Shown piece by piece: positions 12,977 through 31,764 of a stretch of 61,944 nucleotides of DNA. The stretch's first letter is position 1, and every line of letters begins with the position of its first letter. The position numbers and the translations under genes were made by a program. Location of the stretch: the NCBI GenBank assembly GCA_003693705.1, contig RBZT01000610.1, positions 1 to 61,944 on the forward strand. Direction: 5' to 3'. Source of the DNA: Polymyxa betae A26-41 (Eukaryota; Protista; Endomyxa: Phytomyxea). Below the pieces are notes generated by a model. That model searched no databases, was not told where the DNA came from, and saw nothing but the letters and a program-made list of their open reading frames with translations.

Positions 12977-13407
12977 TCTGTAGAAACTGCGCCTGGACTT
13001 CACAGCAACCAACTGACCAAAAGGTACAATAACAGCTCCACAGCTGTTAGTCCAGGGCCTACTTAAGCTGTACTCCACACACCCCTCTCTTGAATGTGAC
13101 TGCATTCCTCACCAGAACCAGGCACTCAGGCCTTTGGCAGAACTAAGTAGGTGACCCCCAACTCAGATGAACCACGCATCTTTTCACGAGTTGTGAGCCG
13201 GTCCGGTCCATTGAACCCAAAAACGTCCAGTACCAGGGGAGACTCGAACCCGACCCTTTGAGCTGTTATTCTGCCAGAGGCCTCAGTGCCTGATTCTGGT
13301 GAGGAATGCGGTGTGTGGAGTACTGCTTAAGTAGGCCTTGGACTAACAGCTGTGGAGCTGTTATTGTACTGTTGGTTGCTGTGAAGTCCAGGCGCAGTTT
13401 CTACAGA
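12977..13407. mobile_element. Non-autonomous foldback/MITE-like element with long inverted arms
   Basis: Left arm 12977-~13142 is inverted as ~13269-13407 (TCTGTAGAAACTGCGCC...GGCGCAGTTTCTACAGA). The centre carries a minus-strand GGTTCGAGTC B-box-like motif. Confidence 0.8.
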
Positions 13408-13680
13408 ACCAAAAGGTACAATAGCAGCTCCACAGCTGTTAGTCCAGGGCCTACTTAAGCTGTACTCCACACACCCCTCTCTTGAATGTGACTGCATTCC
13501 TCACCAGAATCAGGCACTCAGGCCTCTGGCAGAAATAAGTAGGTGACCCCCAACTCAAATGAACCACGCATCTTTTCACGAGTTGTGAGCCGGTCCGGTC
13601 CATTGAACCCAAAAACGTCCAGTACCAGGGGAGACTCGAACCCGACCCTTTGAGCTGTTATTCTGCCAGAGGCCTCAGTG
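13408..13680. repeat. Tandem partial copy of 13016-13288
   Basis: Near-identical direct repeat with an offset of about 392 bp. Confidence 0.9.
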
Positions 13681-13976
13681 CACTTCAAATTACCTTAAAG
13701 GCAAATTGAAGAGGAAGGGGATCAAATTGCAAACGACGATACCATACACACCTCAGAAAAATGGAGTCGCAGAGCGTATGAATCGTACGTTAGTCGATCG
13801 AGCACGGACGATGCTATTGGACGCCGGTCTTAGTATTAGATACTGGCAACATAAAGGCCACTGCAGCACACATCACTAACAGAATCCCTTCAGCGGCGTG
13901 CGGCCACAAATCGCCTTACGAGCTGTGGACGGGTCAGCTGCCTGACATCGGGCACGTAAGAGTCTTCGGGTGTCGG

Positions 13977-16575: not shown

Positions 16576-17848
16576 GGTGTCGGGCATTCGTGCACGTACC
16601 AGATGAGAAGCGCCGTAAGTTCGATCCGAAGGCAATTCTCGGAATCTTCCTTGGATACGCTACCGGGCAAAAGGGATACGTGGTGCAAGACCCTGAAAGT
16701 GGCAAGATAATATTCAGCCGCGACGTGACATTTGATGAGAATCAACTACCAGCTAAGAAGTCAACGGAGAGTCCTAATCTTGAGGTCATCGAACGTCAGG
16801 TTAGCGGGTCGATCAACGAGACGATAGATGACGAGCAGCCGGCGGAAACGAATGACGAACCAGGGCAGCCGCTGATCAATGACGAAGCTGAGCAGGTTGA
16901 TGAAGACAACCCCGATGCACCGCCGAGACGATCTTCGAGAGTAACGGGGCAGCCGGCGCGATACGCCGACGGACAAGCAGACGAATTGATACGAAAAGGA
17001 CAGAGCAAGTCTTCTGGACATGCCGCTTTCTTGGTAAAAGAACCGAAACGCTATGATGACTCCATTGACGGACCAGACGCCGCCAAATGGAAAGAAGCTA
17101 TGAAACAAGAATATCAGTCACTGATGAAGAACAAGACTTGGAGCCTTACCAAACTACCACACGGGCGGAAAGCGATTAAATCCAAGTGGGTATTTAAGAT
17201 CAAAACTCTAGAGGACGGCACCGTGGACCGCTCCAGAGCGAGGCTCGTCGCACAAGGCTTTTCGCAACGCCATGGTGTTGACTACGACGAGACGTTCTCG
17301 CCGGTTGCTACGAAGGCCACGATCAGAATTCCTATCGGTTTGAAGTCGCAGGGGTGGTACGTACGGCATGTCGATGTCGATACAGCTCATCTCAACTCGG
17401 ACGTTGACACCGAGCTTTACATCCTGCAGCCGAAGGGATTCGAGCAATACGACGATCAGGGAGAGATCCTGGTATGCAAGTTAATAAAGGCAATATACGG
17501 CTTAAAACAGGCTGGCTTAGCCTGGTATGATCACCTTTCGAGACTGTTACTGAAGTTGAAGTTCAGGAAGTCGCGTCACGACCCTTGTGTTTTTATCCCT
17601 GATACGCACTGCGTAGAGTGAATATTATTCACTCTTCACTTTTGAGTTTCCTGGAATTTAAGGGATCGGCCTTGGTGAATTTTCCAAGCCCACTCTTATG
17701 ATCTACTCGCATTCCCGAATCGATTGATCTAAAAAAATCCGAAAACGCTCAAATGAAACCTATTAGAATCAAAGGCTAGGGTCTAGGGTTTTTTGACCCA
17801 CGGAATATTAGGAAATTGCGTTAAGATTCACTCTTACGAAAAAAGCGT

Positions 17849-20800
17849 TTATTCAATACGCTGGCCACGAGATCGACGTGGTTGTTCGTCTGGGGGATTA
17901 ACGGTAGGGGTCTCTGGACGTTGGCGACGGCTCCGTTCTGCTCGAGGCGTTTCCGCCCTAGCATTGCGACCTCTACGGCCACGCTGCCCAGGGTCTCGTT
18001 TTGGACGAACCCTTTCCCCCAGGCGATCAACAGAATGGATCAGATCCTTACAGGTGACGTGCCAATTACCCGCCAACTGAACACATGCAGTAACGACGCA
18101 AACGGTGCAGTGAGCTGTCGTTTGCATACCACAAATAGGACAATGACGAATATTTTTGGTTGCTAACCTGTGATGGACGTCTTTACGGAGCCTCGTTTGC
18201 TTCCCAATTGCTCCATTTAGCCACTTCAAAATATTTCTCACAGGCGCCTGAGGAATGTTGTCGACGGGCGCTTCGACAGTCACAGGCCGTACCACTGCCT
18301 GAGAAGGTGCAGCCTCAATAACGTCTTCCCTAATCGCTATGAAGTCAGATGACGGATCCCATTTCTCAACAAAATCTTGCAGAAAATCAGCGAAGGATCC
18401 CAACTTATTCAAGCGCTGCTTCAACTGTTTGTAGGAAGAGAAGTTCGGAAGCTCGTGCTCTATCTTCAGCAACCGCAAAACCATGTGCGAATTCATTAGC
18501 CCAATCATGACAAAGCGAATGAAAATGAACGCTCGAGGTGATAGCCAACGGAAATCGACCTTGACGTTTTTCAAGATTCGGGAGACAACATCCTGCCCAC
18601 CTTTGAAATTATTCCAGTGTGAAACAGCAAAAAAAGTCAGATCATGAGCAGCAGGCAGTGGAGTACCTCTTGTCAGACGAGCATCTTCAAAGGCATTCTG
18701 CAACTTTCTCCAGATTTGCAGCGTACGCAAATCGACAGCGAGACCAATCTCACCAGGGCGTAGATCGATCGGATCTGAGATATCGCTTCCGCTGAAAAAT
18801 TGCAGATGTTCAGCACATTTCGTGAGAATCATCGAAGAGAATAGACGGCGGCATTCCGAGCTTACTTGTACAAGAACAGAGTAAATGATGCGGTTGGTAG
18901 TTGAGACTACAAACAGCAGGTGATCAACACCAGTAACAGCCAAATGATGAAGCACCTGGGATCGATATCCCGCTGTCCAAACTAATTTCTTGAACAGAGG
19001 CCGGTCGTTTGATGTGACAAACAGGCGCTGGTTCAGGTTGTCACAAATCTGCCTTGCTGCGTCAAGACGTTATTCTGGCTCAGTAACCGTTTGAGCTGTT
19101 GTCATGGTCTTCAGTTCCAACACACAAACAATTGCTGACGTTTCTTCCATCTCAGGTGGTACCAGCACCAGTGCACCATCGATGGATGTAGCAAGAAGAT
19201 GGTCGTTTGTGCCTGTAATCGATGATTTACGGCACAGAAGACCACGCTGAACGATGTTGCCAACGATTTGAAAACCTTGACTATGTGTTTGAAAGAAAGA
19301 TGGGAGCGCAGCTCGAATATTCGATTCGTTAACGCTTCCGATTTTCATGTTGGAACTGGTGAAAGGCTTCATGAACCATGTCTTCATTAGAGCAGCAGTC
19401 AACCTAACCGTACGATCTGCAATGGGAAAAAGAATACGCTCGATCAAATATTGCTTAGTGCCCGAAAATGGTTGATTCCGAGATTTACAAAGCGCTTTAA
19501 GTTGATTTGCGGTCTTCGTGGTGAGTTTCTCCCGAGCAAATGCTGGATCATCCGCATGGCCTCGAATACCGATTGTAGAAAGCAATTCTCTTTCGACAGG
19601 GGTGTTAAAACCCTCGAAACAGGTGGTTAAAACCGTATGAGAAACAATCCAACCCGTAACAAATGCCATTCTACACCGCCTTGGCTTCGGGTGTCTGATT
19701 CAGTACATTCGTTTAATGTGGATTGGATCAGAACATGACCAGGCTCAGATACCTCAAACGAGCCAGCACGTTTCGGACGCAGACACCAGACGGATAACCG
19801 GGGAGCTGTGGAGAATATCAGAGCGACCCGACCGCGACCACCTCGGTAGGCGATGGCATAAACCCAGCGGTCAGAGAACTTCCTTCGTGCGACATACATG
19901 CTCTTCGCGCCTTTTTCGACAACATGGCGTCCGAATCCTTGGCCGGTATCACCGAAAGTGAATGGGCCTGATTTCATTCGCTTGAACGTGCCTATCAAGT
20001 GAAAGCCTTGTTGGCAGAGGTATTCAACAAGTCCTGGATTCATATATCCACGATCCATGGCGATAATTTCGTTACCTCCATGTACATGCTCCGGTAAACC
20101 TGCGGATTGCATCCACATAAGAACAATCTTGACAATTTCAGAGAATTTCTCCCCCTTTCCCAGTAACCTCATGCCCAGAACAATAGAGGAAACCAGAGAC
20201 ACGGCATTACTGGAAACAACTCCAAAGGCCTTCTTAGGATTGTTGATTCTCTGAAGTCCTAAGGCTTCAGAGAGTGCTGATGTAATGCGAAACTGATCAT
20301 CATCAAACGATATTGAGGTCACTCCGCGAATGTAAGCCAGTCTACAAGAGGCTGTTGTCAACGCTTGTTCTTCACCACGAATTGTACTGTCAACGCTGAA
20401 AGGAGCCTTCCAGCTGCCGCTGTTATTGCTTTCTCGAACAGATTTCAGACCCGTCATGACTTTCTCAAAAGAAGAGCGCTGCAGCGTGGAAGCAACAGGA
20501 TACAATCCCCTTTTCTCCTCATCAAACAGCCTCGTTGGTGTCGTACAATAAATTGAGAGATATCCTAGAACCTTCATAAATCCAATCAGATCTTTGCCGG
20601 AAACAGCATCAGAGCCTGTGGAAATAAAATGATGTTAGGGTTAGGGTTAGGGTTTGGTAACGTTACCTGATGGTAAGCCTTCACGAACAGCCGTCAGTAG
20701 ATTGCCAGTAATGGCAGACAGAAAATAGTTGGTGACGTCATCAAAAGAAACATTGGCGTTCGTCTCTTTGTTGAACATATTTCTGACATTCTAACAAACC

Positions 20801-20976
20801 GCTTTGATTTCAGTTTGTGCTTGTTCTAGTAACATCCGGTCCATCGCGGAGGTTACAATCGAAAAATCGTCCATTTGTTGAGCGGTAACGTTACTCCACT
20901 CACAGGTGTCCTCTTCAGGACCGACGCTAGAAGTCTCCGACCCAGAATCATCGAAATACTCTGCAAGAGAAGTCAT
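17849..20976 (-). pseudogene. ~1000-aa piggyBac-type DDD transposase with YqaJ/SAP insertion; 1 intron, 2 premature stops, 1 frameshift
   Basis: SFDDDQ, AMDRGY, LIGTFKR, then QGGVEWHLLR, SAP (QLKALCKSRNQPFSGTKQYLIERI), MKIGSVNE, ATSIDG, LELKT, YRSQVLHHLAVTG, then WNNFKGGQD and a C-terminal Cys-rich domain CPIC...CTVC...C...C...H. Confidence 0.85.
20616..20666 (-). other. 51-nt spliceosomal intron containing (CCCTAA)3
   Basis: GTAACG...CCCTAACCCTAACCCTAAC...TTTCCACAG. It contains an in-frame stop, and removing it joins GLPS|GSDAVSGKDLIGFMKVLGY in frame. Confidence 0.85.
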
Positions 20977-22285
20977 ACTGGCTGTACGAAAATACTCACA
21001 AATGCAGCTGCGACGACGAGGTCAAAAATGGGAATTGCGCGGAAACTTTTTTGCGGGGAAATGTTTGGGTCAATCCCTGGGAGATTGCAAAAATTCAGTG
21101 TAATTGGATTAATCGTGGCATTGATTTTATTTTTCGAAATCGACCCATTTTCAGCACTCAAGAGTGAATAATATTCACTCTTAAGCATTAAAACCAGAAA
21201 CACTGCGAACCCCGTAGAATGAATATTATTCACTCTTACTGAATCAAGGTTATCAATAGCGCTAGAGTTTATCTGGCGACCTACGTGGACGATATAATTA
21301 TAGCATCAAAGTTACAGGAAGCTGTTACCGCCGTCGAAGATGGGATGGAGCAGCATCTGAAGATCAATCGCCTAGGAGAGATAAGACATTTCCTAGGATG
21401 GAAGGTCACCAGTTTAGAAAGCTTCGTGATCATCTCCCAAGATTCGTACGTGCTGCAAGTTTTGACGAAATTCGGTATGGAAGATTGTAACCCGGCGACG
21501 ACACCAGGTGTACATGGACAAGCAAGTCAGCAGGACAAGCAAGAAGAGGAAGACACTAACTTTCCTTATCGCGAATGCGTTGGAAGTTTGATGTATATGG
21601 CGAACAGCACGCGTCCTGACATCGCATACGCGGTCCATCACGCAGCAAGGTTCGTCGCTGATCCAAAACGTGAACACATAAAAGCAGTGAAGCGGATCTT
21701 ACGATACTTACGAGGGACGATCGACACAGGCATCATCTTCAAACGTGACAAGAGCAACGGCCTGACCGGATACGCCGATGCCGACTTTGCTGGGCACGAC
21801 GGCGATTCTCGCTCAACATCTGGCTACATTTTTATGATGAACGGGCCGATTACGTGGTCATCAAGACGCCAACGGCTTACCGCTCTCTCGACAACGGAGG
21901 CTGAAATATATGCATTAGCAGAGGCAAGCAAGGAAGCGATGTGGATTGTCAACTTACTGAAAGACATGGAAGTGCGACCGCACGAGGCTTCGATCAAGAT
22001 GATGGAGGACACGCCGCCTGTTACGCCTTAGTCACCGGGGTGAAGGCGCCGACGAGAACGAAACACCTGGCAGTCCGGATCGGGTTCGTACGTGATCTGA
22101 TCAGCAACAAGGTCATCGAAATGGAGCGTTGTCCGACGACGGCGATGCTCGCCGACCCGCTGACGAAGGCGCTCGGGCCAACCGAGTTCAGACGAAAGAT
22201 GGCGACAATCGTCTCTATCGATATGAATGACAAGGGCTGCGCGCGCACTTTTAAGGGTGCCAAGTTCAAGTCGGCCGAGGGAGAG

Positions 22286-22519
22286 TGTAAGATTACCACC
22301 TGTGACGGGGAGCGGCCTCCTCTTGTTGGTTGCGCCACCTCCAACTGTTGGCGACTTGACGGTCGTACCCTACCTATACGATGCGATTGACTACCTTTCA
22401 TACAGTCAATCGCGACCTATTTGCAGTCTGTCATAGACTGACGAAAAGATCTGGAAATAAAGACCTATTGTTATTCGCTATTTTACCGCTAGACTGTCGT
22501 TTAAACCAAAGCTTTTACA
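22286..22519 (+). repeat. Copia 3' LTR
   Basis: PPT GAGGGAGAG directly before TGTAAG; ends TTTTACA; internal AATAAA. Confidence 0.85.
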
Positions 22520-23478
22520 TTTCTGTGTACCGATGCGCCCCAACGAAGTTGTTCGACATCAAAACAGCCATCTCTTCCCGATAGCACAGAAGCTTGACCA
22601 TATCTCATTCAAAAAGACTTTGAAAGCCTTGAACAACCAACCAGCGCAATCTTCTGATTTTCTGCACGATGGAACTCGCGTATTGTTGCTGATGAGTGCA
22701 TCCGACGCACTGAAAGGGCCTTTACCCAAACGTCATCCCGCATTGCTTACGTTGCCGGTCAGACAATAATCTCCTTGGATGACGACCAATACCGAATACG
22801 GTCTGCTCTTTCTGAGGCAATGGGCTTTGTTCGGATCAACAATCCTAAGAAAGCCTTCGGGATTGTTTCTACAAATGCAGTTTCTTTGATAAGCTCAATG
22901 GTTATCAGAATGCGTTTGATCGGAAAAGGGGAAAGCTTTGACGATGTGGTTCGGATTATCTTAATGTGGATTCAAGGCGTTGATCTGTTATCCCAAGTTC
23001 GCGCATCGGGCGAGTTAATGTGCCTTGATCGAGGTTACCTAAGGCCATCTTTGATTGAGTTCCTAATGAATGCTGAGTTTTCACTTATCGGTACTCACAA
23101 ACGCGTCAATTCTTATCCCTTCACCTTTGAAACGCACGCAACCGACTGACTCAACGGGTCGTCGAGGAAATTGGCTGCAAGAACATTTATATCGCCAGAA
23201 AGAAATTTGGTGACAGATTTCTCTACGCCATTGCATATAGATCTGGCAAGGGTCGTGTTGCCACACTTATCTGCACAAACCCCCGCTTAGGTTACATATG
23301 CACCGGGCGAGTTAACTTGCCTTGATCGAGGTTACCTAAGGCCATCTTTGATTGAGCTCCTAATGAATGCTGAGTTTTCACTTATCGGTACTCACAAACG
23401 CGTCAATTCTTATCCCTTCACCTTTGAAACGCACGCAACCGACTGATTCAACGGGTCGTCGAGGAAATTGGCTGCAAG
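22520..23478 (+). pseudogene. Third, divergent fragment of the piggyBac-like transposase with an internal duplication
   Basis: SVYRCAPTKLFD, DDDQYRIRSALSEAMG..RINNPKKAFG, CLDRGY, IGTHKR. About 23006-23179 is repeated at about 23304-23478. Confidence 0.85.
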
Positions 23479-25754: not shown

Positions 25755-25864
25755 TGAGACAGCTATACTACACAGTCCATACTGGTAGAAATTACTGGTC
25801 TTATCATTTATATCATCAGATAGTACGCATCATACTGCGTTCGGAGGTTTAGAGATCCTCAAAT

Positions 25865-28800
25865 CTGGTACAATAGGCGCAAAATCATATGAGAGTTCAT
25901 CAGGTCGACCATGATAAAGCGGATAAAGGTAAAGTCCCGAGGAGTCAAAGACCGAGAATCTACCTTTACGTTTTTCAGAATCCTCGAGACATCATGGCCG
26001 CCTTTGAAATTTGTTCATTGAGACACAATGAATGGAATGATGTCATGGGCAGGAAGAAACGGGTTGCCTCTTGACAAACGCCGCTCTTCGAAAGCCTGCT
26101 GCAGCTTTCTCCATACTTGAACTCTATGGCGATCAACAGAATGGCCAAACTCATCAGCTTGCAAATCGAGTACGGTTGCTGGGTCCCTATCATTGAAACA
26201 CTGCTCATGTTCAGCGCATTTGGTAAAAATCATCGATGAGAATAAGCGCCGAGCTTCACAATTCACTTTCATCAGAACAGAATAGATCACGCTGTTGGTA
26301 CTTGATCCAGCGAAATCAGATGATCATCCCCAGCGACTGCCAAATGATGCGAGCCTGAGAACGATACCTGGTGAGATGGCTTCGGCTCAGAGCCCCTCGA
26401 GCCGACTCAGAAAAATGTCCGAGTCACTCGAGCCGACTCAGAAATTTGCCTTAGCCACTCACGCCGGTGTTGAGTCGGCTCGGAGCCGGCTCGAGTCAGC
26501 TCATTCCTGAGTCGATTCAGAACCGGCTTGAGCCGGCTCTCAGTTGACTCGAATCGGCTCATTTAACTGATTTCATTTCCGTTTATTAAGTATTAACTTG
26601 GTCAGCGCTAACTTTTTTGCTTCAATTTTTTGAACGACTGCAACTCCATCAACATCTGAACTGTAGTGTCCGAAAGCCTAGCCCTTTTTTGCTTATTGTT
26701 AATCCCGCTTTGAGAACGCAATTTCGCTTGGGACAGAGGTCGCCGTCACAGCGAGGAAATTTTTTGCCGTCAGTAAGATGGGAGGATATAATTTCTTTGT
26801 TGACCGGAAAAAAGAGCATATGTCATATGTGCTGTCCTGCAAATTGAGTGGAGAATGATTGAGCCGTTTGTCCACTTCCGCCGAGAAACTCTCTCCCTGT
26901 GGAGCAGAAGAATCCGCATTATCAGGCGATAACATTTTGAATATGTTCGATGTCGAGACGGTGTGGTTAGCAGCTGAATTTTGCTCACCAGCCTTCCGGT
27001 TTTCGTACCTATCATCGTAATGAGAACAAGAGGATGATAAAATAATAACGCCTGATGACCGTACTTAGCCTTATAATGTTCATCAAAAAATGACCTCGAT
27101 CGTAATTTTCTGTCGTTGGACACCAACGCCGCATTTTTCCAGGTGAATCTTGACCTTGGGGTCAAGGATTCCTGCACATATCGCAAATTCGGTGCCAACC
27201 ACGTCGTAATACTGGTTCAGTTTTGTCATTGCAGCCTCGGCGAATTGTACAGTGTGAGTCGACTTGGATCCTGAACAATTGTCAAATTGCTCGTTGCATT
27301 TCGTCCCGAAGACAGTAGATCACTGGAATAACGATGCCGAGGGTGGGGTATGTCGAGCCAGATAACAACACTGTCGCCTCTTTGAAATATCCCAGAAACG
27401 AATGGAAATCTGATATTGCTGACCAGAGCATGTCATTAAAACCACGGGCAATGTAATCGTTCGGTAAAATAGTAAGTCGATCGTAGCCAGGAAAAGAAAG
27501 TTGAATGCGACGAAGGAGCTCATCAATAGCGCATCTCATTTGCTGTAAAACATCGATCATGTCCCATGTCGAATTCCAACGAGTTTCGCAGTCCAACAAA
27601 AGCTGACGGAAATTAATTCGAAGATCACCGCAAACAGCTTCAAGGCGTTCACCAATCTTGGGAGAATCATTCACCTTTTTAACGAATTCACGAACCGTCC
27701 GATACTGGAACTCTTGAAGTCACAATCTTTCATCCCCTTTATGACGCATAATTGAAGAACATGTGCAAGACAACGAAAGAGATTCACATTCTGAACCGAT
27801 TCTTGCGGTACCTCCTCAGGCTCAGTATCATCATCATCATTCTGATCCGCAGCTGGGTCATGATGGTGATCCAATAATGTCTGGAAAAGTGACAGCATAG
27901 CAACGCTGGTGATGGCATTATCGGCTGTTATCGCCCAGATGCGCTTTAAAAGGACAGGGTCGAAATCCTTGATAGCATCAAATTCAGCGTTAGCAATGTT
28001 TTGCGATGTATGAAGATACACCACTCGGGGAAATGCGATCAAGACGGTTTGCATTTCAAATTCATCGTCCTTCCAGTGCAATGTATCCTAGAGAATACTC
28101 AGAATAGTGATTTCAAACGGACGATAAGTTATTTGCCTTTTTCGGTTGGCGACGTCCATAAATCTGTGGTTATACCAACTCTTCGAACTTCAGTAGCAAT
28201 TCGCAACTGAAGAATAGTCTCTGCTGTACTTTGCAGATGAATATCTTTGACGCGACTATTTATAACCTTTCGTGATGGAAGAGTGTACTGATCTTCAAGA
28301 ACGTAACAGAATCGAATAAAATTCTCTTGCTCGACCATTTTAAAGGAGTGATATCCTGCACAGCATGTCGATCAAGAGTTCATTAGCTTCGTCCTTTCTC
28401 AGCTATGGCATCTTTCCAACATTTCTTATTCTTCCGAATACCGTCGACGCTTCAGAATAAACGCACCAGGTTTTTTGTTGACCCTTTGGCAGCGTTGGAA
28501 TATACCTTGACAAGTAATTAGCCAAACTAGCTGATGGTCATGTATGCGGTACCTTTTAGGATACTTAACTTGTAAATCTTTGGGAAGTTCCCACTGTTCC
28601 GTGTGTCGTAGGAATGCTTGCACAGCTTACAACGGTATATGATCTTCTCATCCTTATTGAGAATATCGAAAAATTCCCAGACATCAGAGCTTTTAGAAGC
28701 AGACCCCTCGGTCGCTGCGTCATTCAACAACAGATCTGGGCCTAAATGTTCTGCTCCAGTGATTTCCACGACATCCGCCAGCGACGGCATGGACGTGCAG

Positions 28801-31764
28801 GTGGCTGAAGACGGTGACTCTATGAGCTCCAGAGAGGCTAAGCCATCGAAAGAGGAGACTGTTGAAGCAACGTGGACTGTTGCTATGAAGTTTTGTTTAG
28901 TTATGAGTGAAGCGTGGCTAAGGTACCTAGATCTCTTGCACGATGTTGCAAGGCTTTTATTTCCACTTCAATAATTGTTGTTAATTTATAGAGCCGATTA
29001 TATACAAAAACTGTGCGGCGATGGTATTATGGGATCTTTTCGTTGTTGCGCATGCCGTGTGCCGCTACTCCATTTATGTTGTCGTCACATGGCTCCACGT
29101 CGGGGGTCAAGTATAGGATCCACATCAACAGAGACCACGCCACGACAAAACGTCCAGGACAGACGTGAGACGTCCGCGACCACGAACAAGGGGAGCGATT
29201 CAGCGTCAACGCACGGTCCGTCACGGACTTTGTTTGATTCTAATCTAAACACCAAAACCGTAAATTTTTAATCTTTTCGTGAAATTCTATAAATTGCTTA
29301 TAATACTCGTAATAGTTGTAATAGTTCTTAAATCACTAGAAAAACGTTGATCTGGCGGCAGGGCAGGATTACTTTTTCTGAGCCATGCTGAGTCGACTTG
29401 ATCGGACTTAGAATCCACCACGAGCCGCTCGAGCCGACTCGGCTTTAGGTCGCAGCCATGAGCCGAGCCGAGCCGACTCGAGCGGACTCGAGGGGACTCA
29501 TGGCGAGCCGCGGGCCATCTCTAATAACTAAACTGGAGGTCTAAACCAGTTTCTTGAAAAGAGGGCGCTCATAAGACGTGACAAAGATTCGCTCCCCTGT
29601 GTTGCCCACACGTCCAAGGCTTCCTCCAAACGTCGTTCAGCTTCCGATACGGTATGTTCTGTAGTCATCGTCTTCAGCTCTAATATGCAAACGAATGCAG
29701 ATAACTCATCCGCTTCTGGGGGCTGTAGCACCATAGCCCATCGATGGATGTCCCAAAAAAATGCTCGTTTGTGCCGTCAACCAAGCATTTCTTGCGGAGA
29801 AGACCACGTTGCACAATGTCACCAAGTATGCGAAAACCTTGACCATGCCTTTCAAAGAAAGAAGGCAATGCTAGAGGAATTTTTCGATTCGTTGGCTCTT
29901 CCAACTTTCAGATGAGAGGCAGTAATAGGTTTCATGAACCACAAAGCCATGAGGTCATCAGTCAGCCTGATCGGCAAAGCTTCTGATGGCTGAAGGAGAC
30001 GATCTATCAGTTCTTGTTTGTTGCCAGAAAGTGGCAGCTTTCTGGATTTACACAAAGCTTTCAGCTGAGTGCTCGTTTGGTTCACCAAATCGTCCTTGCT
30101 CAATGTCACTGCACGGTGGCAACCCGAAATACCAAGTGCTAAAAGCAAATATCAAAGAAATCAAAGCAACTGGAAAGTACGGTATGTGCAACAGTTGAAG
30201 AAATCAGGCCAATGCGTAAAAGATGTCATCCAACTCCTCCCTGGCTTTGGGCAATGGGTTCTGTAAGAGTGTCGATGGACGACTGAATCAAATCATGACC
30301 TACACCCGAAATGTCAAAAGCTCCAGGGCGTTTCGGTCGATGGACCCAAACAGAAATTCTCGGTTCTGTTGACAACAGCAAAGCGACCCTTCATCTGCCA
30401 CCGCGGTATGCCACAGCATAAACCCATCGTTCGGCGAACTTCTTTCGTGCGACGTAAATGCTTCTGGCACATGTCTCCGCGATAACTCGGCTGCTGCCTG
30501 TGCTGATCTTGCCAAAAGTAAATGGACCAGATTTGAGCCTCTTAAGGATACCAATGAGCTGAAATCCCTGTTGACAGAGGTATTCCAGAACTTGAGGGAT
30601 CAAGTATCCTCTATCCGAAACAATAACTTCATTCCGACCCCGAAAATGCTCAGGTAGATCTGCTGACTGCATCCACATCAGAATGATCTTGACGTTATCA
30701 GAGTAGTTTTCGCCATTCCCCATCAATCGCATGCCAAGAACGACAGAAGACATTAAGGTCAATCCCAAAGCTTCAGATAACGCAGAGGTTAAGCGATGTT
30801 GATAATCGTCCAGAGATATTGATGATATACCGCGGATTTATGCAAGCGTACCGCAGCTACACTGAACGATTGTTCGAGGGCTCGATTTGAAGTGTCAACG
30901 CTGAATGGAGCGCTCCAGCTGCCGTAACTGTCGGCCTCCCTTTTGGTCTTCAGACTTCTCATAAGTTTGTCAAAAGAGGTCTTGCTCAGCGCAGGTGCCA
31001 TTGCGTAGAGACCTGACTTACTCTTATCAAAGAAGCGCGATGGCGTTGTCCGAAAGATCGAGAGGTAGCCCAGACCCTCAGGAAGCATACCAAATCAGAT
31101 CCAGACCCACGTTCCATTCCTATGTGTGTTTATTAAGATTTCTGACAATCCATTGCAAAAAGACGTTGGTGTTTATCGGATGGCAATCCCTCTTGAATAG
31201 CAGCGAACAAATGATCAGCAACAGCCGATAAAAAGTTATTGACAACGTCATCAAACGTTTCATCCTCGTTAGATTCCCTGTTGAAAATTTGTCGTACGTT
31301 ACGACTGACTGCCTGAATTTCTGGAAAAGCTTTTTCAAGCAGCATCTCGTTCAAAGCAGTTGTTGCGATAGAAAAGTCATTCATCTGCATGACGCTTAAG
31401 TAGTTTCATTGCTGGCATTCGATTTCGTCGCCATCATCGGTCTCCTCCGATGAAGAATTATCGCAGTCGTCAAAGAACTCCGCAAGAGACGTCACTGCAG
31501 CAAAAGAGATGGCTCAGAACGCAGCCTGTGAGAGTGACCGTCGGGTCAGGAATTTCACGGAAACGTTTTTGCGGGTTAGGGTTTGGGTTAATACGAAACT
31601 CAGTGCAAAATTTCATGGACGACAAAGTTACCGTTGCTCCGATTTTTATTGTCAAAGCTGGCTCATTTTGAAGGCTAAGAGGGAAAATTATTCCCTCTTA
31701 GCGTTTCTGAGGCGAAGTTGCGAACTCCGAGGAGCAAATATTATTCCCTCATATTGCCTTAGGG
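25865..31764 (-). mobile_element. Second, degraded and 3'-truncated piggyBac-YqaJ copy interrupted by a hAT
   Basis: Same motif order: VSDRGY, HLLRIGLISST, SAP QLKALCKSRKLPLSGNKQELIDRL, GTSIDG, LELKT, YRSQ..HHLAV, GGHD..SRILKNVKVD. The terminus CCCTAAGG at 31764 and the AGAGGGAA..ATTCCCTCT palindromes align with the copy-1 end. Confidence 0.85.
26371..29523 (-). mobile_element. hAT transposon with degraded transposase
   Basis: Termini (TA)GAGATGGC..CGGCTC; many GAGCCGACTC subterminal repeats; SDVWEFF..CKLC BED finger, TTDLWTS, TADNA, CLAHVLQL, ETRWNST, ATSVPSEIAFS. No clean 8-bp TSD. Confidence 0.92.

What the first reader, a model, noticed from the sequence alone, without database searches (positions are those of the whole stretch)
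17597..21249. piggyBac-like transposase with a YqaJ (lambda-exonuclease-like) nuclease and SAP domain inserted inside its catalytic core
Seen: joining minus-strand ORFs 20791-20976, 19627-20577, 19070-19669 and 17849-18955 gives one ~1000-aa protein. It has the piggyBac landmarks in order: D1 SFDDDQ (~20300), D2 AMDRGY (~20050), LIGTFKR, D3 WNNFKGGQD (~18595; compare YN.TKGGVD) and a C-terminal Cys-rich domain. Between D2 and D3 (~19690-18880) sits a full YqaJ motif set: Q..VEW..LR, M..G..NE, ATSIDG, LELKT and Y..Q..H.L.VTG...FVV. A SAP domain is nested inside the nuclease. Established: piggyBac has an insertion domain between D2 and D3, and YqaJ-like nucleases occur in ISL2EU as a separate ORF and, as I recall, in some Kolobok elements. 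Inference: this is a two-nuclease transposase whose exonuclease could resect or process donor or target ends. I do not know of this intra-core fusion being described, but I cannot confirm novelty.
Basis: partly seen in the sequence, partly recalled or inferred. Interest (0 to 1): 0.92.

Follow-up and report, generated by a model that had tools for sequence, protein, structure and literature searches.

The report
piggyBac transposase with built-in exonuclease
This is a dead copy of a widespread but unannotated family of protist jumping genes whose cut-and-paste enzyme carries a second, DNA-chewing enzyme inside its own catalytic domain, and which inserts at looser target sites (any-T-A-any) than the piggyBac element used in gene engineering.

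Summary
Confirmed. Window 17597-21249 (minus strand) is a complete but dead 3,653-bp piggyBac-type DNA transposon: CCY...RGG ends, a 4-bp TTAT duplication, inserted in a Copia reverse transcriptase whose empty site occurs in three runs. It has two nonsense stops, a frameshifting deletion and one intron. An intact relative (P0001, 1,074 aa, 58-74% identical by domain) folds as piggyBac transposase (Z 25.6) with a lambda-exonuclease domain (Z 15) and a nested SAP motif between D2 and D3. All 57 relatives with both catalytic halves share the layout at 20-35% identity (a biased sample). Nuclease catalytic and 5'-phosphate-pocket residues are invariant, and the two domain trees are broadly congruent. 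Targets are NTAN. The residues that read the central T-A in piggyBac are kept; the tyrosine that stabilises the outer pair is not. Best mechanism (inferred, about 45%): the exonuclease trims the donor-derived 4-nt 5' flap that would mismatch a new NTAN site. Rivals: donor-break resection, TnsA-like nicking. No description was found in the papers searched; Repbase (piggyBacX, recalled from memory) could not be checked. This scan noted the same family earlier on other pieces of this genome.

The parts
17597..21249 (-). Whole element, 3,653 bp, piggyBac-type DNA transposon, complete ends but dead gene
   Evidence: Ends and duplication read from sequence; empty-site contigs in three runs skip 3,657 = 3,653 + 4 bases
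17593..17596 (+). Target-site duplication, TTAT (ATAA on the element strand)
21250..21253 (+). Target-site duplication, TTAT; removing the element and one copy restores the Copia RT frame
   Evidence: RVT_2 profile split at positions 153 and 169
21161..21249 (-). Left end: terminal CCTTGAT plus two 21-bp palindromic subterminal sites (21216-21236, 21161-21181), probable binding sites of the Cys-rich domain (inferred)
   Evidence: same layout in L047 and in other subfamilies
17597..17836 (-). Right end: terminal repeat (CCCTGAT on +), palindrome 17615-17635 and a damaged second palindrome 17823-17836 just after the stop codon
   Evidence: intact counterpart in L047
20667..20976 (-). Exon 1: acidic disordered N-terminus and start of the dimerisation/DNA-binding domain; premature TAG at 20793-20791
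   Evidence: low pLDDT for residues 1-54 of P0001
20616..20666 (-). 51-nt GT-AG intron containing three CCCTAA telomere-like repeats; same position as a 48-nt intron read through in P0001
   Evidence: splicing inferred from sequence, no RNA run found
20290..20310 (-). First catalytic Asp (SFDDDQ; D258 of P0001 = D268 of T. ni piggyBac)
   Evidence: 29/29 invariant
20044..20061 (-). Second catalytic Asp (AMDRGY; D341 = D346)
   Evidence: 29/29 invariant
19760..19990 (-). Beta-stranded piggyBac insertion domain, retained in front of the nuclease (approximate limits)
   Evidence: model strands 392-434 of P0001
18680..19692 (-). Lambda-exonuclease-like PD-(D/E)XK domain (P0001 residues about 460-795); broken here by a deletion near 19645 and a TAA at 19072-19070
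   Evidence: VIA Z 15.2 to lambda exonuclease, 202 residues aligned, rmsd 3.3; residue map
19430..19522 (-). SAP DNA-binding motif nested inside the nuclease
   Evidence: Pfam PF02037 E 1e-5; present in 53 of 57 relatives
18590..18661 (-). Return to the piggyBac core: P..W N..KGG.D with third catalytic Asp at 18592-18590 (W825, N826, D833 = Y439, N440, D447)
18035..18145 (-). C-terminal Cys-rich domain
   Evidence: aligned to the piggyBat and T. ni Cys-rich domains in the family profile; PF13842 weak in P0028
16509..17596 (+). Host Copia pol, 5' part (SH3, RVT_2 1-153)
21250..22390 (+). Host Copia pol, 3' part (RVT_2 169-241 and downstream)

Best explanation
Shown (about 0.97): a decayed copy of an old, diverse lineage of piggyBac-type cut-and-paste transposons. 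One transposase of 1,000-1,300 aa carries a lambda-exonuclease-type nuclease with a nested SAP motif, inserted at the end of the piggyBac insertion domain just before the helix that bears the third Asp. The elements duplicate a 4-bp NTAN target. Inferred: the DDD core excises by the normal piggyBac hairpin route, which leaves a 4-nt, 5'-phosphorylated flap of donor flank on each end. In TTAA-specific piggyBac that flap matches the new target. With NTAN targets it would mismatch in roughly nine of ten jumps. The built-in 5'-to-3' exonuclease, held on DNA by SAP and probably working as a non-toroidal, low-processivity domain, removes the flap so that the 4-nt gap is filled from the target strand and a clean duplication results.
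For: Architecture. Selection on the nuclease: Q465, W470, R474, E588, S635, D637, E658, K660 and Q711 are invariant in 40 sequences at about 25% identity. They map to lambda exonuclease Q19, W24, R28, E85, S117, D119, E129, K131 and Q157; that R28/S35/S117 bind the 5'-phosphate is from my own knowledge. Transposase and nuclease trees share 13 of 26 splits against 0.3 by chance. Target: 29 of 33 ends in this genome and 21 of 21 ends elsewhere are NTAN, 10 of them TTAA. Hairpin and target contacts Y439 and N440 of T. ni (PMC7351741) are kept as W825 (44/46) and N826 (45/45), while no aromatic is conserved at the Y283 position. Seven of nine non-TTAA insertions in assembled genomes have identical duplications, and this copy has the proven target sequence on both sides. 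Ordinary piggyBac gives asymmetric duplications at non-TTAA sites (PMC8717057).
Against: No biochemistry and no RNA evidence. Host flap and mismatch repair could give the same clean duplications; 7 of 9 is not distinguishable from independent random repair (p about 0.09), and two insertions are mismatched (TTAT/TTAG, CTAG/TTAG). Lambda exonuclease is a processive trimer acting on duplex ends, more than a 4-nt flap needs. In this genome targets are still biased towards TTAA-like sites (CTAA, TTAA). The residue mapping of the omega loop rests on sequence alignment only.
Confidence: 0.45

Rival explanations
1. Same element, but the exonuclease resects the chromosomal donor break. This blocks piggyBac's seamless re-ligation and pushes repair into homologous recombination from the sister chromatid, restoring the donor copy and giving a net copy gain.
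For: Resection for recombination is the native job of lambda and LHK exonucleases, the top structural matches. Seamless excision leaves no copy behind (PMC7351741). The insertion domain lines the channel that holds flank and target DNA. SAP could add processivity.
Against: Copy numbers in this genome are modest (about 20 loci). It does not explain the link with relaxed NTAN targeting. No donor-site footprints could be examined.
Confidence: 0.25
2. The nuclease replaces the hairpin step by cutting the non-transferred strand, as TnsA does for TnsB in Tn7 (precedent from my own knowledge).
For: A DDE enzyme paired with a PD-(D/E)XK nuclease is a known solution for double-strand excision. The Y283 equivalent, which also contacts the hairpin, is not conserved.
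Against: The insert ranks with 5'-end exonucleases, and TnsA is not among the 50 best matches. The 5'-phosphate pocket and wedge residues are invariant. W825, N826 and partly R265 and K282 of the hairpin-binding set are kept.
Confidence: 0.12
3. The nuclease is a housekeeping or self-limiting accessory that destroys free excised or abortive intermediates and has no role in normal end processing.
For: A similar role was proposed for the KolobokD exonuclease (PMC9587614). Accessory nucleases are common in Kolobok and ISL2EU.
Against: Strict retention inside the catalytic domain in 57 of 57 relatives and congruent trees suggest a step coupled to the transpososome.
Confidence: 0.13
4. The fusion is an artefact of nested insertion, or the two parts are separate proteins, or the nuclease is a dead structural spacer.
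For: The window is a nest of decayed elements. Some database relatives appear as two ORFs (P0160 and P0002).
Against: Dozens of intact single ORFs. The split in P0160/P0002 is a 52-nt GT-AG intron whose removal gives one frame of about 1,000 codons. The third Asp lies after the nuclease, so the N-half alone lacks a full active site. Catalytic residues are invariant.
Confidence: 0.03

Closest known systems
piggyBac superfamily (T. ni piggyBac, PDB 6x67; piggyBat, PDB 9c0f)
   Same: Fold of the DNA-binding, catalytic and insertion domains (Z 25.6, 380 residues aligned, rmsd 3.5); DDD triad; KGG.D motif; Cys-rich C-terminal domain; CCY...RGG ends with palindromic subterminal sites; 4-bp duplication with central TA.
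   Different: About 350-aa lambda-exonuclease plus SAP insert between D2 and D3; NTAN instead of TTAA; only 13-16% identity; below the Pfam DDE_Tnp_1_7 cut-off; longer omega loop without the Y283 aromatic.
Lambda exonuclease / YqaJ family (PDB 3slp, 3syy; mimivirus R354)
   Same: Fold (Z 15.2 and 14.6) and all catalytic and 5'-end-binding positions.
   Different: Embedded in a transposase with both termini tied into the RNase H fold; SAP inserted after motif I; trimer formation unknown.
KolobokE
   Same: Eukaryotic DNA transposon with a lambda-exonuclease-like nuclease; 4-bp TA-centred duplication (PMC9587614).
   Different: [quoted passage not shown]
ISL2EU
   Same: Encodes a YqaJ exonuclease (PMC4122938).
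   Different: Separate ORF, IS5/PHIS-type transposase with THAP, 2-bp duplication.
Repbase piggyBacX / piggyBacA (recalled from memory, not tested)
   Same: Recalled as divergent piggyBac groups; piggyBacX from red algae and oomycetes, piggyBacA with ATAT duplications. An ESM Atlas cluster of 1,206-aa SAP-bearing proteins with oomycete members resembles this family (score 0.78, a lead only).
   Different: I recall no nuclease being described for them. No paper in the library mentions piggyBacX, so identity can be neither shown nor excluded.
Tn7 TnsA-TnsB (own knowledge)
   Same: DDE transposase working with a PD-(D/E)XK nuclease.
   Different: TnsA is an endonuclease outside the DDE domain; not a structural neighbour here.

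Membership tests
piggyBac superfamily | RNase H-like DDD transposase of the piggyBac fold | tested here: met
   Profile E 7e-14 to piggyBat and 1e-8 to T. ni; Foldseek rank 1; Z 25.6; D258 and D341 29/29, D833 43/44
piggyBac superfamily | C-terminal Cys-rich domain | tested here: met
   44 of 57 relatives
piggyBac superfamily | Short terminal inverted repeats starting CCY with subterminal palindromes | tested here: met
piggyBac superfamily | 4-bp target-site duplication | tested here: met
   Empty site skips 3,653 + 4 bases; 9 of 11 paired sites identical
piggyBac superfamily (canonical) | Strict TTAA specificity | tested here: not met
   NTAN at 50 of 54 ends, TTAA at 10
piggyBac superfamily | Hairpin-mediated, seamless excision | not testable with these tools
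   Only residue conservation
Lambda exonuclease / YqaJ | Fold and E..PD..EXK..YxxQ catalytic set | tested here: met
   Pfam YqaJ weak (best member E 1e-4)
Lambda exonuclease / YqaJ | Motif I (Q..W..R..T.S) forming the 5'-phosphate pocket and wedge | tested here: met
   Family level. In the window copy the last part is deleted
Lambda exonuclease / YqaJ | Toroidal trimer and processive 5'-to-3' activity | not testable with these tools
   No assay or multimer model
Kolobok (KolobokE) | RR...YY termini, C/DxxH-group transposase, nuclease downstream of the transposase | tested here: not met
   Termini are CC...GG; nuclease lies inside the core
ISL2EU | Separate YqaJ ORF, THAP-bearing PHIS transposase, 2-bp duplication | tested here: not met
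   Single ORF, 4-bp duplication
Repbase piggyBacX | Sequence membership in the Repbase group | not testable with these tools
   Repbase not available; zero papers in the library

The most novel reading that the evidence does not exclude
An undescribed, eukaryote-wide lineage of two-nuclease transposases in which a complete, active 5'-to-3' exonuclease sits inside the DDD catalytic domain and carries out an obligatory end-processing step, uncoupling piggyBac chemistry from TTAA so that it inserts cleanly at NTAN sites.
Probability: 0.35. Interest if true: 0.88.

Novelty: new variant of a known kind. Interest (0 to 1): 0.72.

Why it matters
Insertion domains of DDE/D transposases are normally small DNA-handling modules. 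Here a second complete enzyme is inserted there and has been kept active across 20-35% identity. piggyBac's TTAA specificity and seamless excision are structurally coupled (PMC7351741); this family is a natural experiment that relaxes the target to NTAN and loses the predicted residue, so the coupling model and the fate of the donor flap become directly testable. Intact and apparently recently mobile members exist (a 3,674-bp element identical at several different flanks), which offers ready substrates and possibly a vector with many more target sites. Databases label these proteins only 'SAP domain-containing' or hypothetical, so the family is missed by current annotation.

Tried and rejected
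Single-sequence Pfam and PDB searches gave only SAP and sub-threshold DDE_Tnp_1_7/YqaJ; profiles and folding were needed. Three alignments were too diverged for the search for related loci; the one scan that ran gave 10 mostly partial loci, and viral contigs were not scanned. Left and right flanks in metagenome contigs are chimeric across identical copies, so they were used for the target spectrum only, not for duplication fidelity. A search for close relatives lacking the nuclease found four proteins of at most 439 aa and none of canonical piggyBac size with the third Asp; three end where the nuclease begins, one of them at a confirmed intron. That tool is insensitive and length-limited, so absence is not shown. 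A 2-bp TA duplication was rejected because the outer bases vary between insertions yet match on both sides. Kolobok and ISL2EU were rejected on termini, duplication and fold. The viral fold search did not point to one donor group. Ten paper searches found no description of the architecture; four wanted papers were not held.
Full report
Setting. The window is a whole 62-kb contig of a 27.09-Mb, 1,001-contig eukaryotic assembly. From memory that size fits the plasmodiophorid Polymyxa betae; this was not tested, but the nearest named relatives are Plasmodiophora brassicae proteins. The region is a nest of hAT, Copia and other decayed elements.

The element. It spans 17597-21249 on the minus strand, begins CCTTGAT, ends ATCAGGG and is flanked by TTAT on both sides. 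Each end carries a 21-bp palindrome, twice at the left end and once plus a damaged copy at the right. It interrupts a Copia reverse transcriptase: Pfam RVT_2 positions 1-153 lie before it and 169-241 after it, and removing the element with one TTAT restores an open frame through the DPCVF...YVDD motifs. Contigs from three runs in three studies contain the empty site, skipping 3,657 bases, that is 3,653 plus 4. The ends and the 4-bp duplication are therefore shown.

The gene. This copy is dead: TAG at 20793-20791, a deletion of about 13 bp near 19645 that shifts the frame and removes the ITST motif, and TAA at 19072-19070; sister copies lack these lesions. The stops near 20655 lie in a 51-nt GT-AG intron (20666-20616) that has a counterpart at the same place in relatives. 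About 20 related loci exist in the genome, none with a full open frame among those read, plus non-autonomous derivatives of about 550 and 965 bp with the same ends. No RNA run holds the stretch.

Intact relatives. A search with the 430-aa open frame of a sister copy found 228 representatives. The best, P0001 (1,074 aa, metagenome contig L047 with the same end motifs), is 58-74% identical to the window copy by domain. Many others are 900-1,450 aa and only 20-35% identical to each other; named ones come from Plasmodiophora brassicae and Chromosphaera perkinsii. All 57 fetched proteins that have both the D1-D2 core and the D3 segment carry the nuclease between them, 53 with SAP; the sample is biased because the query contained the nuclease. 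One relative that looks like two ORFs is split by a 52-nt intron.

Domain identity. The family profile matches piggyBat (E 7e-14) and T. ni piggyBac (E 1e-8) in three collinear blocks, with about 450 profile positions where piggyBat has 50 residues. The AlphaFold2 model of P0001 (pLDDT 86) matches T. ni transposase at Z 25.6 over residues 90-914 and lambda exonuclease at Z 15.3 over 460-795. The insert folded alone (pLDDT 92) ranks lambda exonuclease and LHK-Exo first among 48,161 chains (Z 15.2 and 14.6). The normal beta-stranded insertion domain is kept, and the nuclease follows it, just before the residue equivalent to P433.

Selection on the nuclease. Q465, W470, R474, E588, S635, D637, E658, K660 and Q711 are invariant and align with lambda exonuclease Q19, W24, R28, E85, S117, D119, E129, K131 and Q157. 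From my own knowledge, R28, S35 and S117 hold the 5'-phosphate and W24 is part of the wedge. Trees of the transposase part and the nuclease part for 29 proteins share 13 of 26 splits against 0.3 for shuffled labels (maximum 3), with five conflicting well-supported pairs. This fits one old acquisition and mostly joint inheritance.

Target. Flanks are NTAN at 29 of 33 ends in this genome and 21 of 21 elsewhere; 10 are TTAA (paired ends are counted twice, and the typed tally left out three ends added here). In assembled genomes nine insertions have identical 4-mers on both sides (ATAA, TTAA twice, CTAA three times, TTAG, TAAT, and TTAC in P. brassicae) and two differ by one base (TTAT/TTAG; CTAG/TTAG in a 9.4-kb composite). 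In T. ni piggyBac the second T sits in a pocket with Y439, the third A is read by N440, and the outer T-A pair stacks on Y283 (PMC7351741). The family keeps W825 (44/46) and N826 (45/45) but has no conserved aromatic in the Y283 region. This explains NTAN, by alignment and inference.

Mechanism. piggyBac excision leaves a 4-nt donor flap on each end, and at non-TTAA sites the mismatch gives asymmetric duplications (PMC8717057). With the observed spectrum two random sites are identical only about 9% of the time, so this family would face a mismatched flap in most jumps. A 5'-phosphate-dependent exonuclease beside the hairpin-binding helix is well suited to remove it. I put this at about 0.45. 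Resection of the donor break to force copy-restoring recombination (0.25), clearing of intermediates (0.13) and TnsA-like second-strand cutting (0.12) remain open. The duplication counts do not separate these, since host repair could give 7 of 9 clean sites.

Comparison and novelty. It is a piggyBac by fold, triad, ends and 4-bp duplication, but fails strict TTAA specificity. It is not Kolobok or ISL2EU, whose exonucleases lie downstream of the transposase or in a separate ORF (PMC9587614; PMC4122938). No paper searched describes a nuclease inside a piggyBac core. I recall a Repbase group piggyBacX from red algae and oomycetes; an Atlas cluster with oomycete members hints at that range, so the family may already be catalogued, perhaps without its nuclease recognised. 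The scan itself noted this family on at least seven other pieces of this genome, which is not independent support.

Verdict. Real, conserved and widespread; a new variant of a known kind; interest 0.72. The architecture is secure, the role of the second nuclease is inferred, and novelty is unconfirmed against Repbase.

Noticed in passing
window 25830-31764 (-): A second, more decayed member of the same family (left end CTAT then CCCTAAG at 31764), split by an hAT-like insertion at about 26365-29530 that interrupts the nuclease region.
   Followed up: partly
window 22516-23431 (+): Fragment of a third subfamily (D1-D2 core only), with a 179-bp direct duplication and a Copia-type gag/LTR piece behind it.
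   Followed up: no
window 20616-20666 (-): The intron contains three CCCTAA telomere-like repeats; similar CCCTAA/TTAGGG runs occur near the ends of several family members, including the unrelated L097.
   Followed up: partly
L052-L055: A 3,674-bp element encoding P0015 is 100% identical in four metagenome contigs with at least three different left and four different right flanks, all NTAN: probably a currently or recently active member.
   Followed up: partly
L101:5262-5313 and P0160-P0164: Several relatives have an intron exactly at the start of the nuclease or at the end of the insertion domain; retention would give a truncated DNA-binding protein without the third Asp, a possible inhibitor. 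No RNA evidence.
   Followed up: partly
G000 C455, C931, C634, C648; C641, C893, C789, C446: Two non-autonomous families (about 550 bp and about 965 bp) share the ends of autonomous subfamilies; each subfamily has its own subterminal palindrome around an AT-rich core.
   Followed up: partly
L047:2717 (-): The metagenome contig that holds P0001 also carries, head to head, the end of another subfamily nearly identical to the C455 family ends of this genome, suggesting a related host.
   Followed up: no
window 12977-13681: Complex foldback of nested direct and inverted repeats (274-bp direct copies, 73-bp arms).
   Followed up: no
window 17584 to 21252: Besides the clean empty site, two runs hold a Copia variant with 10 other bases at this junction; probably a diverged Copia copy rather than an excision footprint.
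   Followed up: no
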